Shown here piece after piece: positions 51,186 to 54,045 of a stretch of DNA of 64,000 nucleotides (the first letter of the stretch is position 1; the number at the start of each line of letters is the position of its first letter). Origin of the DNA: Glycera tridactyla (lineage: Eukaryota); contig OZ286459.1 of assembly GCA_965644265.1 (NCBI GenBank), positions 131,006,001-131,070,000 on the forward strand, in the 5' to 3' direction. The notes beneath the pieces were generated by a model. The model saw only the letters and a program-made list of their open reading frames with translations. It ran no database searches and was not told where the DNA came from. The position numbers and the translations under genes are program-made.

Positions 51186-52860
51186 ATTTTTGTGTTAGGC
51201 ATCTTCTCCCTCTGCTGTGAAATGCTATACAGAACCCCGGTGGAATAGTTTCTTCTTCCTCAGGCCCTGTCCTATTCCTGTTATTTGATTGTACGTTATT
51301 TTTGTGACCCCCTGTGATGCCCTTTTTCAGTGCCTTTTGATGTAGGATTGAATGGAAGGAGTTCCATGGGTATGGATTTTCTAGGAAAGATCTGTGGCAT
51401 CTGAAATTTTCATCATAGAAACGGTAGTCCCCTCCCATTGCCTCGATTTCTCTTATATCATTCAGATATGTTAACATGTCCATGCCATCTTTTGCTTTTT
51501 GTTGCCAACTTTTCAAAGGATTTTGAGTGTATATTGCTTGGTATGTCATGAAAGCTTCTTCCCAGTCTTGAAAAGATCTTATTGCTTTATGTTTTTTGGC
51601 TATTACAAATTTTCCCGTTTTTCCATCTATCAAATACTGGTTATGGGACATTCTAGCTGGGGCTAATAGTTCTGTGAAATCCACATACCGGTCCTGCCAA
51701 ATATCCAGTTTAGAGTCCCAATCCACATTGTATCCTATAGGAAGTCCTCCCGTGACTATTTGTCTTGGTTCAGGATCACCTAGCCATCCAAAATCGCTAC
51801 TGTTGCCTGGTCTGTTATTATCTCCCGAACCACTGAAAGGTGATCTCATATCCCTGTAATCCATTCTGTTCCTGGGACCCCCTTCTCTATATCCCCTCTG
51901 TCTAGCTGCTTCAGCAAAATTGTCATCCAAACTTGATTTTTGACCATTGATTTTTGATCTCATGGTTTCAAGCATTTGAAATCTGGAAAAATTTTGTATA
52001 TCGGTGGATTCATTGTTCGGGGAAGTTACTGTGTTCGATCCCCTGCTATTTTGCCCACTCTGTAGCCCCCCTTGATTGTTTAAATAGTTACTGCCATTGT
52101 TTCCCATGTGTCTAAATAGATTTCCGTGTGGTGTGGCTGTAAAACTGGTATCTGATGAACAATTTGTATTGTTGTTTGTTTGTTGCGTGTTTGCATTTTT
52201 GGTTGTGTTTGTTTTCATATACAAATCATTCGTACCTGATTGTTCATTTCTTTGTTCCTGCTGGATGTTCTCCGATGTTCTGGGTTCTGATCTTGTTTGA
52301 AGTCCATCGATTTTTGTCTTCATCTCTGCCATAATTGTTGCTAGGCTGTTCATTTGCTCGAATGCTTGAGACATCGTCGACTGGAACTCACTTCGTAGGT
52401 CTTTGATGGGGTTTCTCCTCGTGCTGTCTTCGTTTGACGAGTCTCCGCATGAAAAACCAAAATTCACATTTGCATCAGCCCAGTTATACCCTCTGTTCGT
52501 CCCTTGTAACCTATGTGTACAGCTGCTTGCATTTAATGCATGTTTCCTAAGTTTTTCAAGTTTTTGCCCCATTGTGTCATGTTGGGTGTCCTTCAGAGAC
52601 TGTTGGCTTTCTTCACTCAGCTGTGACATATCCCTGGGCTGTTGTCCACATGGTATTTGGCTTTGACTCTGTGCTTCTAAATCTATGGTAAAAGGGCCCG
52701 ACTGCTCCTCTCCCACATCATTAGATTCAGATATTTGTTGTTCAGCATTCCCCAATGTCACTGGTTCGAAGTCTTTGTCATCTGGACACTTCCCTAATGC
52801 TTCCGGTTTGCGTTTTGGATCTCCCCCTCCACCGTCAACTGATTTCCTTTTTGAAGCCAT
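51025..52860 (-). CDS. gag: Gag-like ORF1 with C-terminal zinc fingers (611 aa from ATG 52860)
   Basis: Open frame; IRSFQDWEEAFMTY block and CIAFHSRGRRCLTQKCGYKHACPKCGNRHPIFMC (CCCH+CCHC) as in DIRS/Ngaro Gag; overlaps pol by 161 nt. Confidence 0.88.
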   Translation of the reverse strand: MASKRKSVDGGGGDPKRKPEALGKCPDDKDFEPVTLGNAEQQISESNDVGEEQSGPFTIDLEAQSQSQIPCGQQPRDMSQLSEESQQSLKDTQHDTMGQKLEKLRKHALNASSCTHRLQGTNRGYNWADANVNFGFSCGDSSNEDSTRRNPIKDLRSEFQSTMSQAFEQMNSLATIMAEMKTKIDGLQTRSEPRTSENIQQEQRNEQSGTNDLYMKTNTTKNANTQQTNNNTNCSSDTSFTATPHGNLFRHMGNNGSNYLNNQGGLQSGQNSRGSNTVTSPNNESTDIQNFSRFQMLETMRSKINGQKSSLDDNFAEAARQRGYREGGPRNRMDYRDMRSPFSGSGDNNRPGNSSDFGWLGDPEPRQIVTGGLPIGYNVDWDSKLDIWQDRYVDFTELLAPARMSHNQYLIDGKTGKFVIAKKHKAIRSFQDWEEAFMTYQAIYTQNPLKSWQQKAKDGMDMLTYLNDIREIEAMGGDYRFYDENFRCHRSFLENPYPWNSFHSILHQKALKKGITGGHKNNVQSNNRNRTGPEEEETIPPGFCIAFHSRGRRCLTQKCGYKHACPKCGNRHPIFMCGNAFRNFSQNTSHQPPARTKTGTSGDTNKGNQAA

Positions 52861-52934
52861 CTGTAACAATTATGTGCTAATGTGCTATGTTTGTGCAAAG
52901 TGTGTGTAAACAACAATAACATGCTCATTCTCGG

Positions 52935-53651
52935 CTACTGCCATATTGGTAATACTTCCGCAAGCCCATTCATACAAGTTAACATTGCTTGTCTCATCTC
53001 GCAAGTGTATCTCTTGAAAAATTTTGAATTCTCTCTGGGATGTATCCCATCGTCGCTCCATATATGCACTAGCGAAGGAGAGTCGTCATTTAGGTTTCCA
53101 AACCAACGTGTATTGTAGAACTTTAGTCCCAAGTTACCTTCGCATGCAAACTCCAATTTCCCATTGAAACGAACCGCTCGTTGTTTGAAATCTTTTGGCC
53201 CAGCTGTTCTATCTAGAACTGACATAAAACCGACCATTTTTATGTCATGCTGTACCCGTAATTTGACCCCGTATTCAAATAAGTCTACTGCTAATTGTCC
53301 AGGTTCAATTGATTTTTTAACCAAGTCATTACTCCCTAAATCAATCAAAACTATGTCGGGAGACAGAGCTGCAATAGCGAAAGCTTCGTCTTCAATGGAT
53401 ACTGCATTGTCGTATGTTTTTATAAGAGGCCGTGACCTGAAATCGATCGTCTGTATGCACCTGTCTAAGTTGAGTAGCGACGCGTTGATTTGTCCTCGTT
53501 TCGCTTGACCAGAGTTCACCTGTTCGACTAATCCCAAGTTTTGTATGCGGCGCCATAAATCATCGTCTTGTCTACGCGAGAAAGAATGACCGAGAACCGT
53601 CAGCTTGGCTTTCCGCCCTAACCAATCCTCTACTTTAATATATTGTGACAT
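52935..53651 (-). CDS. SGNH/GDSL hydrolase ORF of the retrotransposon (238 aa from ATG 53651)
   Basis: Block I VLGHSF, block III LGSNDL, block V DDGIHP; catalytic Ser/Asp/His and oxyanion Asn all present. The ORF track start at 53759 lies upstream of the predicted TSS. Confidence 0.88.
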   Translation of the reverse strand: MSQYIKVEDWLGRKAKLTVLGHSFSRRQDDDLWRRIQNLGLVEQVNSGQAKRGQINASLLNLDRCIQTIDFRSRPLIKTYDNAVSIEDEAFAIAALSPDIVLIDLGSNDLVKKSIEPGQLAVDLFEYGVKLRVQHDIKMVGFMSVLDRTAGPKDFKQRAVRFNGKLEFACEGNLGLKFYNTRWFGNLNDDSPSLVHIWSDDGIHPRENSKFFKRYTCEMRQAMLTCMNGLAEVLPIWQ

Positions 53652-53725
53652 GGTGAATACTATGCGATTATTACCTAGCAACAACAACAACAACAATGGA
53701 CAACGAAATTGACAACGTGTTTTAC

Positions 53726-54045
53726 CTTCGAAACGCAGCCGAGAATGAGAACGAGTCATTGCAAGAGTCGCCTTATATACCCCCTATCATACTCCCTCTG
53801 GTGTTTCACACAATTCCTAAAACATAGAACTTTTTCATGTACAATTCATCACAATTATACAATCCTGCCAAATATGTACATCAATCAAATGATCATCAAA
53901 TAATTGTGAATAGAAATAATTATTGAATATCCATATCATACATGAGTGCCCTCTCTGGTTAGGTCCGTTCAAAGTTTCACTTCCCTAACTTAAACCCTTA
54001 TCTTTGTTCGCAAAAATAAAATTTTTTGGGAAAACAATTTTTGAT
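53726..54045 (-). repeat. Split direct repeat A1 (320 bp)
   Basis: Copy of 47484-47803. Confidence 0.97.
53743..53779 (-). promoter_or_regulatory. Pol II core promoter in repeat A (TATA box + initiator)
   Basis: Minus strand TATATAAG at 53779-53772 and TCATTC at 53748-53743 (A at 53746), about 31-33 nt apart. Confidence 0.65.

What the first reader, a model, noticed from the sequence alone, without database searches (positions are those of the whole stretch)
52861..53725. SGNH hydrolase ORF sits inside a predicted intron: splicing switch between hydrolase and Gag
Seen: repeat A1 ends exactly at a donor-like GAAG|GTAAAA (GT at 53725-53724; the A2 copy diverges at exactly this base). An acceptor-like TTGTTACAG|ATG ends at 52861, directly abutting the gag start codon at 52860. 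The 865-nt interval contains the entire hydrolase ORF (53651-52935). Inference: unspliced RNA presents the hydrolase ATG first, while splicing yields a 21-nt leader fused straight onto the gag ATG, so one promoter makes two mutually exclusive proteins. I know of no description of this arrangement in YR retrotransposons but cannot search the literature. The polypyrimidine tract is weak.
Basis: partly seen in the sequence, partly recalled or inferred. Interest (0 to 1): 0.85.

Follow-up and report, generated by a model that had tools for sequence, protein, structure and literature searches.

The report
Hydrolase gene inside a retrotransposon intron
A young jumping gene of the tyrosine-recombinase (Ngaro) type keeps an esterase-like gene inside what looks like a real intron just ahead of its capsid gene. 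The two splice signals, and an RNA helix that ties the intron ends together, are conserved in very distant relatives, but no RNA data could be obtained to show the splice itself.

Summary
Repeat A1 (54045-53726, minus strand) ends at GAAG|GTAAAA. The identical A2 copy diverges at that base. TTGTTACAG|ATG abuts the gag start at 52860. The 865-nt interval holds an intact SGNH hydrolase ORF.

This is more than chance. AAG|GTRA and YAG|ATG are kept in all 11 copies of this family (72-77% identity), in two deeply diverged families of the same genome (hydrolase about 50% identical) and in related elements on foreign contigs.

New here: the whole short leader is complementary to the stretch at and after the hydrolase stop codon. 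This 13-25 bp helix has fully compensatory changes between families, so the hydrolase ORF is looped out.

Every copy has upstream ATGs between the hydrolase stop and the gag ATG, so gag is hard to reach without splicing.

No RNA run was listed, so the junction is untested, and no intronless genomic copies were found.

Verdict: probably a real intron, giving hydrolase from unspliced RNA and gag from spliced RNA. It is a new variant of the Ngaro kind. Other first readers of this scan noted the same layout elsewhere in this genome.

The parts
53726..54045 (-). Split direct repeat A1 (320 nt). It carries the promoter and the whole leader / exon 1, and ends exactly at the exon-intron boundary.
   Evidence: 100% identical to A2 at 47484-47803; identity ends after GAAG
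53772..53779 (-). TATA box TATATAAG preceded by a G run
   Evidence: Sequence. Conserved in all three families of the genome; mean pairwise identity 0.94 in family 1.
53726..53749 (-). Leader / putative exon 1 (21-26 nt; start inferred from TATA spacing and the initiator TCATTCT with A at 53746). It is also the 5' arm of the long-range helix (core CTCATTCTCGGCT, 53749-53737).
   Evidence: Identity 0.91 against 0.51 at codon position 3; complementary to 52936-52924
53720..53728 (-). 5' splice-site-like AAG|GTAAAA (GT at 53725-53724)
   Evidence: AAG|GTRA invariant in the 13 A1-type copies of family 1 and in families 2 and 3 (GAAG|GTGAAT, GGAAG|GTAGAA). Foreign families: A|GTAAGT, CG|GTAAGA, CG|GTAAAA, GG|GTAAAC.
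52861..53725 (-). Putative 865-nt intron containing the whole hydrolase gene
   Evidence: Intron length is 837-971 nt in all families.
53679..53696 (-). (TTG)6 tract about 30 nt downstream of the donor
   Evidence: Sequence. A similar T/G tract follows the donor in family 2 and in L080. Function unknown.
52935..53651 (-). SGNH hydrolase ORF, 238 aa, with the catalytic blocks GHS (S23), GSND (N108) and DGIHP (D201, H204) intact
   Evidence: Pfam Lipase_GDSL_2 E=6.3e-5, below the curated cut-off. Blocks invariant across families. AlphaFold pLDDT 92.5; best PDB folds are PAF acetylhydrolase Ib, GDSL lipases and sialate O-acetylesterases. Purifying selection: codon position 2 identity 0.90 against position 3 identity 0.51.
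52913..52965 (-). 3' arm of the long-range helix (core AGCCGAGAATGAG, 52936-52924, overlapping the stop codon), followed by the conserved GTTATTGTTGTTT (52920-52908)
   Evidence: RNAduplex -26 to -34 kcal/mol against shuffles of -11.7 +/- 2.3. Present in the minimum-energy and centroid folds of the 909-nt 5' region. Compensatory changes between families.
52861..52869 (-). 3' splice-site-like TTGTTACAG, directly abutting the gag ATG
   Evidence: YAG|ATG in all copies of families 1-3 and in L079 and L080. The bases just upstream vary (TTACAG, TTTTAG, TTGCAG, TTTCAG) while AG is kept.
51025..52860 (-). gag-like ORF (611 aa from ATG 52860), with a basic N-terminus and a Cys/His-rich C-terminus
   Evidence: no Pfam family. 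The position and the N-terminal M-x-x-K-R-K motif are shared with relatives.
49480..51185 (-). Reverse transcriptase (49800-51185) and RNase H (49480-49791). The reading frame changes inside RNase H near 49800-49806 in this copy.
   Evidence: RVT_1 E=2.3e-13, RVT_3 E=0.0044; frame analysis
48599..49579 (-). Tyrosine recombinase ORF (326 aa)
   Evidence: Phage_integrase E=2.7e-5, below the curated cut-off
47802..48566 (-). Split direct repeat B1 (765 nt). It overlaps A2 by the dinucleotide AT.
   Evidence: 100% identical to B2
47484..47803 (-). Split direct repeat A2. It has the same leader but is followed by the spacer x instead of a GT donor.
47451..47483 (-). 33-nt spacer 'x' between A2 and B2, conserved among family copies. 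Function unknown.
46686..47450 (-). Split direct repeat B2, the 3' end of the element

Best explanation
The window holds a very young 7,360-bp Ngaro-type tyrosine-recombinase retrotransposon (A1-internal-B1-A2-x-B2, minus strand). Its first gene is an intact SGNH hydrolase that lies inside a genuine spliceosomal GT-AG intron.

Proposed mechanism:
- Transcription starts about 21-26 nt before the end of repeat A1, from a TATA plus initiator promoter.
- Unspliced RNA is the genome-length template and the mRNA for the hydrolase, whose ATG is the first one.
- Removing the 865-nt intron joins the short ATG-free leader directly to the gag ATG. This gives the gag(-pol) mRNA.
- A conserved long-range RNA helix pairs the whole leader, up to a few bases from the donor, with the sequence at and just after the hydrolase stop codon. 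The hydrolase ORF is looped out and the two splice sites are brought together.
- This helix exists only in unspliced RNA. It most likely sets the splice ratio, marks the unspliced RNA as the replication template, or both.

Shown: the sequence features, their conservation and covariation, the SGNH fold, and the element architecture.

Inferred: the transcription start, the splicing itself, which protein comes from which RNA, and the role of the helix.
For: 1. Family 1. The donor AAG|GTRA and the acceptor YAG|ATG are invariant in 11 full copies of this family at 72-77% identity. Codon third positions there are only 0.51-0.54 identical and the hydrolase 5' UTR 0.38.

2. Deeper families in the same genome. 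The same layout occurs in two families whose hydrolases are 50-54% identical and whose non-coding DNA is not alignable. These read GAAG|GTGAAT...TTGCAG/TTTCAG/TTTTAG|ATG and GGAAG|GTAGAA...TGTTGTTTCAG|ATG.

3. Foreign contigs. The layout recurs in L080 (A|GTAAGT...TTGTGTTTAG|ATG), L079 (CG|GTAAGA...TTTGTTTCAG|ATG), L075 (CG|GTAAAA...GTGTTTTCAG|GG) and L085 (GG|GTAAAC...GTGTTGTAG|ttatcATG).

4. Translation context. Position -3 before the gag ATG is always C or T. That is a poor translation context, so the conserved YAG is not explained by translation.

5. Upstream ATGs. Every copy has 1-4 ATGs between the hydrolase stop and the gag ATG, mostly out of frame and overlapping the gag start. The leader has none.

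6. The leader/3'-arm helix. Energies are -18 to -40 kcal/mol against shuffled means of -8 to -15. It is present in families 1-3, L079 and L080 with completely different sequences: CGGCTA/TAGCCG, CGGTT/AACCG, CGTCTAGA/TCTAGACG, TCTATTCTCGTTTGACTTGG/CTAAGTCAAGCGAGAATAGG, and a perfect 22-bp pair in L080. There are 32 G.U cells against 3 C.A mismatches, so pairing holds on the sense strand only. The helix closes the minimum-energy and centroid folds of the 909-nt 5' region.

7. The hydrolase is under purifying selection and has the SGNH fold.

8. The genome holds at least 1,908 hydrolase candidates, most of the scored ones with open frames, so the design is successful.
Against: - No RNA evidence: no RNA run was listed for this stretch, so no junction read was examined.
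- No intronless genomic copies (leader fused to the gag ATG) were found for three families by junction patterns. If gag-pol mRNA were readily reverse-transcribed, such copies would be expected.
- In this copy the polypyrimidine tract is weak, two AG dinucleotides lie within 25 nt upstream of the acceptor, and no canonical branch point is evident.
- A first exon of about 21-26 nt is unusually short.
- The helix abuts or includes the donor, which could hinder U1 binding rather than help splicing.
- The families share ancestry, so conservation counts are not independent trials.
Confidence: 0.7

Rival explanations
1. There is no splicing. Gag is translated from the unspliced bicistronic RNA because the leader/post-hydrolase helix lets ribosomes bypass (shunt over) the looped-out hydrolase ORF or reinitiate after it. 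The GT and AG are conserved for other reasons.
For: The helix starts at the predicted 5' end of the RNA, and its 3' arm ends 50-85 nt before the gag ATG. This geometry resembles shunt structures in plant pararetroviruses (established knowledge, not tested here). The absence of intronless genomic copies needs no further explanation under this reading.
Against: It does not explain why GTRA follows the leader and YAG precedes the gag ATG in every family while neighbouring bases vary. There are 1-4 mostly out-of-frame ATGs between the 3' arm and the gag ATG in every copy, several of them inside or just after the arm, and they would capture shunted or scanning ribosomes. There is no short upstream ORF before the helix of the kind classical shunting uses.
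Confidence: 0.12
2. The complementarity and the boundary at the end of A1 serve replication, not gene expression. Possible roles are template selection, strand transfer or self-priming of cDNA. On this reading the splice-like dinucleotides are incidental to that role.
For: The end of repeat A coincides exactly with the putative exon end in every A1/A2 pair of family 1. Repeat boundaries in DIRS-type elements are set by the replication mechanism, and DIRS-1 needs its internal complementary region for transposition (PMC7192593). A conserved 33-nt spacer follows A2.
Against: G.U pairs are tolerated only on the sense strand, which argues against a structure in minus-strand cDNA or a double-stranded DNA protein site. 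This reading also does not account for the conserved YAG abutting the gag ATG, 55-126 nt beyond the helix. It is compatible with, rather than exclusive of, a real intron: the helix could mark unspliced RNA as the template.
Confidence: 0.1
3. The acceptor before gag is used for spliced-leader trans-splicing, which resolves a hydrolase-gag bicistronic transcript. The cis donor is not its partner.
For: A strong acceptor sits directly before the second cistron. Some invertebrate phyla resolve operons in this way (established knowledge).
Against: A consensus donor is conserved at a fixed place after the leader in all families. That would be unnecessary under trans-splicing. No spliced-leader gene or outron signal was looked for or seen. 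The nearest named relatives of the reverse transcriptase are from bivalve molluscs and an annelid, groups not known to me to trans-splice.
Confidence: 0.04

Closest known systems
Ngaro-like YR retrotransposons with an SGNH hydrolase ORF (Goodwin and Poulter 2004, as cited in PMC9210276; Xenopus DIRS-53_XT and DIRS-54_XT)
   Same: Split direct repeats A1...B1-A2-B2, gag-like ORF, RT/RNase H, tyrosine recombinase, no methyltransferase, and an extra SGNH hydrolase ORF of unknown function.
   Different: In the amphibian elements the hydrolase ORF comes after the recombinase and all ORFs overlap (PMC9210276). Here it is the first gene, between the promoter and gag, flanked by conserved GT and AG and by a covarying RNA helix. 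No intron or splicing is described for Ngaro elements in the literature I could search.
Retroviral and LTR-retrotransposon subgenomic splicing (env mRNAs; extra ORFs of plant Ty3/gypsy elements; ORF3 of bdelloid rotifer LTR elements, PMC5408684)
   Same: One promoter. Unspliced RNA serves as genome and as one mRNA, and a spliced RNA expresses another gene. In retroviruses the packaging signal spans the major donor, so only unspliced RNA is packaged (established knowledge).
   Different: The logic is reversed. The accessory gene would be read from the unspliced RNA and gag-pol from the spliced RNA. The accessory gene sits at the 5' end inside the intron instead of at the 3' end.
Esterase (SGNH) domains of CR1/L2-type non-LTR retrotransposon ORF1 proteins (PMC3905857)
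   Same: A retroelement carries an SGNH-fold esterase, for which a role with lipids or membranes in retrotransposition was proposed.
   Different: There the esterase is a domain of ORF1p in a LINE. Here it is a free-standing protein in a YR retrotransposon. No sequence-level match to solved structures was found.
Intron-bridging RNA helices that bring splice sites together (for example in yeast ribosomal-protein gene introns; recalled from memory, not checked here)
   Same: Complementary segments near the 5' and 3' ends of a long intron loop out the interior.
   Different: Here the 5' arm is the capped first exon itself, and the loop contains a complete protein-coding gene that is used from the unspliced form.

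Membership tests
Ngaro-type YR (DIRS-order) retrotransposon | Reverse transcriptase/RNase H together with a tyrosine recombinase instead of a DDE integrase | tested here: met
   RVT_1 E=2.3e-13; RVT_3 E=0.0044; Phage_integrase E=2.7e-5, which is below Pfam's curated cut-off. RT relatives at 50% identity sit next to recombinase ORFs on foreign contigs.
Ngaro-type YR (DIRS-order) retrotransposon | Split direct repeats A1 ... B1-A2-B2 | tested here: met
   A 320 nt and B 765 nt, each pair 100% identical. B1 and A2 overlap by AT. A 33-nt spacer separates A2 from B2.
Ngaro-type YR (DIRS-order) retrotransposon | No methyltransferase domain (this distinguishes Ngaro from DIRS1 and PAT) | tested here: met
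   No methyltransferase family among the Pfam hits of the five ORFs
Ngaro-type YR (DIRS-order) retrotransposon | Placement of the RT in the Ngaro clade of a phylogeny | not tested
   No tree with named reference elements was built. Assignment rests on architecture.
Spliceosomal GT-AG intron | 5' splice site matching MAG|GTRAGT | tested here: met
   AAG|GTAAAA matches at -3 to +4. AAG|GTRA is conserved in families 1-3, and GT followed by A is kept in the foreign families.
Spliceosomal GT-AG intron | 3' splice site YAG preceded by a pyrimidine-rich tract | tested here: met
   YAG is kept in all families. The tract is weak in this copy (TTGTTACAG) and strong in others (TGTTGTTTCAG, TTGTGTTTAG).
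Spliceosomal GT-AG intron | Recognisable branch point with no AG between it and the acceptor | tested here: inconclusive
   No canonical yUnAy was found by eye. There are two AG dinucleotides within 25 nt upstream of the acceptor in this copy.
Spliceosomal GT-AG intron | RNA molecules with the exon-exon junction | not testable with these tools
Exact-protein contig look-ups found nothing. All related contigs fetched are from genome or metagenome assemblies or from sequencing runs of unstated type.
SGNH/GDSL hydrolase | Conserved blocks I (GxS), III (GxND) and V (DxxH) with the Ser-Asp-His triad | tested here: met
   GHS (S23), GSND (N108) and DGIHP (D201, H204) are invariant or nearly so in 30 aligned homologues.
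SGNH/GDSL hydrolase | Three-layer alpha/beta/alpha SGNH fold | tested here: met
   AlphaFold pLDDT 92.5, pTM 0.90. Foldseek probability 1.0 to PAF acetylhydrolase Ib, GDSL lipases and sialate O-acetylesterases, with TM 0.46-0.57.
SGNH/GDSL hydrolase | Score above Pfam's curated threshold | tested here: not met
   Lipase_GDSL_2 scores 24 bits against a cut-off of 32.9 for the window protein. The homologue in L080 has a precomputed unmarked hit, meaning E at most 1e-5.

The most novel reading that the evidence does not exclude
A whole clade of invertebrate Ngaro retrotransposons runs a reversed retroviral programme. The accessory esterase is read from the unspliced genomic RNA, and gag-pol only from a spliced subgenomic RNA. 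A covarying cap-to-intron helix acts as the switch: it exists only in unspliced RNA, tunes use of the adjacent donor, and marks that RNA as the sole template for reverse transcription. This would explain why no intronless copies accumulate even though gag-pol is made from spliced RNA.
Probability: 0.35. Interest if true: 0.8.

Novelty: new variant of a known kind. Interest (0 to 1): 0.66.

Why it matters
YR retrotransposons are the least understood order of retroelements. How they express several ORFs and choose their replication template is largely unknown, and the role of the Ngaro hydrolase is unexplained.

A conserved intron that hides the hydrolase gene, together with a covarying helix between the capped leader and the intron's 3' part, gives a concrete and testable expression mechanism. 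It also gives a candidate cis-acting RNA signal.

The element supplies its own natural mutants: families with different helix sequences, families with a catalytically dead hydrolase, and a relative without the hydrolase. The family is abundant, with at least 1,908 hydrolase candidates in this 2-Gb genome, and this copy has identical repeats. RNA tests should therefore be easy in the host.

Tried and rejected
- RNA evidence: the look-up of sequencing runs listed no RNA run and its cap is one, so read laying could not be used.
- Exact-protein look-ups for the window's hydrolase and gag found no contig.
- The word-indexed protein search with the hydrolase found nothing. The exhaustive profile search did find relatives.
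- Intronless (spliced and reverse-transcribed) genomic copies were sought with leader|gag junction patterns for three families. None was found.
The sample within this genome is therefore three families.
- I tested whether the 33-nt spacer after A2 is a second exon or a copy of internal sequence. It occurs nowhere else in the element, so the idea was rejected.
- The bacterial promoter/terminator scan is irrelevant to a eukaryotic element.
- The PDB sequence search gave no hit; the fold search was needed.
- Two Logan contigs (L082, L083) and L077 were checked as possible transcripts. They are distant families without a hydrolase and say nothing on splicing.
- In L075 the bridging helix is not better than shuffles, so that family is counted for the splice sites only.
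- The extra pairing of CAATGAC (53761-53755) with GTTATTG lies upstream of the predicted start site. It is treated as unproven.
- Goodwin and Poulter 2004 could not be read.

Full report
**The observation**

- A TATA box (TATATAAG, 53779-53772) lies upstream.
- A short conserved leader ends GAAG at 53726.
- GTAAAA follows, with GT at 53725-53724.
- An ORF of 238 codons runs from ATG 53651 to TAG 52937-52935.
- The acceptor-like TTGTTACAG (52869-52861) abuts the ATG of a 611-codon gag-like ORF at 52860.

The interval 53725-52861 is 865 nt. Exact extension of the repeats gives this layout:

| Part | Coordinates | Length |
|---|---|---|
| A1 | 54045-53726 | 320 nt |
| internal region | 53725-48567 | |
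| B1 | 48566-47802 | 765 nt |
| A2 | 47803-47484 | 320 nt |
| spacer x | 47483-47451 | 33 nt |
| B2 | 47450-46686 | 765 nt |

Both repeat pairs are 100% identical, so A2 does diverge from A1 at the base after GAAG.

The longest frame formally begins at ATG 53759. That ATG lies upstream of the predicted start site and is not conserved.

**What the element is**

Pfam finds RVT_1 (E=2.3e-13), an RNase H-like stretch, a phage-integrase-type tyrosine recombinase and a weak GDSL-lipase match for the first ORF. Together with the split direct repeats and the lack of a methyltransferase, this is the Ngaro architecture.

The hydrolase is real.
- Blocks GHS, GSND and DGIHP are invariant across families.
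- Codon position 2 is 0.90 identical against 0.51 at position 3 in family 1.
- The AlphaFold model (pLDDT 92.5) matches PAF acetylhydrolase Ib, GDSL lipases and sialate O-acetylesterases at Foldseek probability 1.0.

In this copy the reading frame changes inside the RNase H domain near 49800-49806. The copy may therefore not be autonomous, or the assembly may have a homopolymer error.

**Are the splice-like sites more than chance?**

The genome (2.04 Gb) holds about ten further full copies of the same family at 72-77% identity. In all of them the leader is followed by AAG|GTAA and the gag ATG is preceded by YAG. The bases just upstream vary (TTACAG, TTTTAG, TTGCAG).

Mean pairwise identity in family 1:

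| Segment | Identity |
|---|---|
| leader | 0.91 |
| donor +1 to +6 | 0.83 |
| third codon positions | 0.51-0.54 |
| hydrolase 5' UTR | 0.38 |

A protein search of the genome found at least 1,908 hydrolase candidates. Loci from two much more distant families (hydrolase 50-54% identical, non-coding DNA not alignable) show the same plan. That plan is TATA, a leader starting TCTCATTCTCG or TCTATTCTCG, then GAAG|GTGAAT or GGAAG|GTAGAA, the hydrolase ORF, and finally TTGCAG, TTTCAG, TTTTAG or TGTTGTTTCAG abutting the gag ATG.

Relatives were found with the RT and with a hydrolase profile. They sit on contigs of other assemblies and repeat the plan:

| Locus | Donor | Acceptor |
|---|---|---|
| L080 | A\|GTAAGT | TTGTGTTTAG\|ATG |
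| L079 | CG\|GTAAGA | TTTGTTTCAG\|ATG |
| L075/L076 | CG\|GTAAAA | GTGTTTTCAG\|GG (first ATG 21 nt later) |
| L085 | GG\|GTAAAC | GTGTTGTAG\|ttatcATG |

Position -3 before the gag ATG is always a pyrimidine. That is a poor translation context, so translation does not explain the conserved YAG.

**A new feature: a covarying leader-to-intron helix**

The leader (core CTCATTCTCGGCT, 53749-53737) is the reverse complement of the sequence overlapping and following the hydrolase stop codon (AGCCGAGAATGAG, 52936-52924). This is its only complement in the element.

RNAduplex gives -18 to -36 kcal/mol for leader against intergenic region in families 1 and 2. Shuffled means are -8 to -15. In family 3 the partner lies in the last codons of the hydrolase (20-22 contiguous pairs, about -30 to -36 kcal/mol).

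The pairs change in a compensatory way:
- CGGCTA/TAGCCG in the window copy.
- CGGTT/AACCG in L048.
- CGTCTAGA/TCTAGACG in family 2.
- TCTATTCTCGTTTGACTTGG/CTAAGTCAAGCGAGAATAGG in family 3.
- TCTCACTCGTTCATGAACCGAAG with its perfect 22-bp complement in L080.
- CTCACTTCGGTCTCT/AGAGGCCGAAGTGA in L079.

There are 32 G.U cells against 3 C.A mismatches. The structure therefore holds on the sense strand, which points to RNA rather than a DNA inverted repeat or a minus-strand cDNA structure.

Folding the 909 nt from the predicted start to just past the gag ATG closes the whole region with this helix in both the minimum-energy and centroid structures. The 5' arm begins within 2-3 nt of the predicted start site and ends 0-8 nt before the donor. 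The 3' arm ends 50-85 nt before the acceptor. The helix therefore loops out the hydrolase ORF and brings donor and acceptor close together. It can exist only in unspliced RNA.

**Why gag would need the splice**

In unspliced RNA the hydrolase ATG is the first ATG. Between the hydrolase stop and the gag ATG every copy has 1-4 further ATGs, mostly out of frame and overlapping the gag start. The leader has none. After the splice, the gag ATG would be the first ATG.

**What is missing or speaks against**

- No RNA run was listed, so the junction is untested.
- No genomic copies lacking exactly the intron were found for three families. Either spliced RNA is excluded from reverse transcription, or there is no splicing. 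The first would fit a selection signal that needs the intron, such as the helix. DIRS-1 RT was shown to act in trans (PMC7192593).
- In this copy the pyrimidine tract is weak, AGs lie shortly upstream of the acceptor, and no clear branch point is seen.
- The first exon would be only 21-26 nt.
- The helix may occlude the donor rather than help it. The direction of its effect is open.

**Comparison with what is known**

The searchable literature describes Ngaro hydrolase ORFs only after the recombinase, in amphibians, with unknown function (PMC9210276; PMC6681497; PMC7192593). It describes esterases in LINE ORF1 proteins (PMC3905857) and extra ORFs in rotifer LTR elements expressed from spliced messages (PMC5408684).

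I found no description of a hydrolase-first Ngaro, of an intron in a Ngaro element, or of the helix. The original Ngaro paper could not be read, so prior mention there cannot be excluded.

Other first readers of this scan noted the same hydrolase-in-intron layout in other pieces of this genome. Those notes are unchecked and add no independent evidence.

**Verdict**

The reading is partly supported: the comparative evidence is strong and the RNA is untested.

The most likely account (0.7) is a real intron that lets one promoter give hydrolase from unspliced RNA and gag-pol from spliced RNA, with a conserved helix as part of the control. It is a new variant of a known kind of element.

Noticed in passing
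window 47451-47483 (minus strand); also L015, L016, L017, L020, L024-L026, L029: A 33-nt spacer (consensus about TCCCACCACCARCCCCAACACCAYC.AGRAGA) sits between A2 and B2 in every copy of the family. It has no other copy in the element. The usual A1...B1-A2-B2 scheme has no such piece, and its role is unexplained.
   Followed up: partly
window 49800-49806 (minus strand): The reading frame changes inside the RNase H domain at a short T run, so RT and the rest of RNase H are in different frames in this copy, although its repeats are 100% identical. It may be a defective copy mobilised in trans or a homopolymer error of the assembly.
   Followed up: partly
window 47802-47803, 54045/54046 and 46685/46686: B1 and A2 overlap by the dinucleotide AT. 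The element is flanked by ...CCACAG and GTGTGTG... with no target-site duplication. This fits a tyrosine-recombinase crossover within AT.
   Followed up: no
window 53679-53696 and 52908-52920; the same in families 1 and 2, L079 and L080: T/G-rich tracts, (TTG)n about 30 nt after the donor and GTTATTGTTG just after the 3' helix arm, recur at both ends of the putative intron in four of five families. They may be binding sites for a splicing or packaging factor.
   Followed up: partly
L074:40-963 and L085:222-1091 (foreign contigs): Relatives keep a hydrolase homologue upstream of gag whose catalytic residues are all replaced (GHEW for GHS, R/GANEL for GSNDL, NGFTPD for DGIHP). It is followed by a local hairpin instead of a leader complement. 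The ORF appears to be retained without esterase activity.
   Followed up: partly
L077:330-440 (foreign contig): A related element without a hydrolase has a G run, then TTTTGCG|GTAATT...CTTGTAG|GT, about 43 nt between GT and AG, upstream of gag. This may be a remnant or a precursor of the intron.
   Followed up: no
window 53780-53786 and the same place in L007, L018, L020-L025: The G run just upstream of the TATA box varies from 5 to more than 20 G between copies.
   Followed up: no
window, whole: The window contains 1,567 N. They were left as they are and not examined.
   Followed up: no
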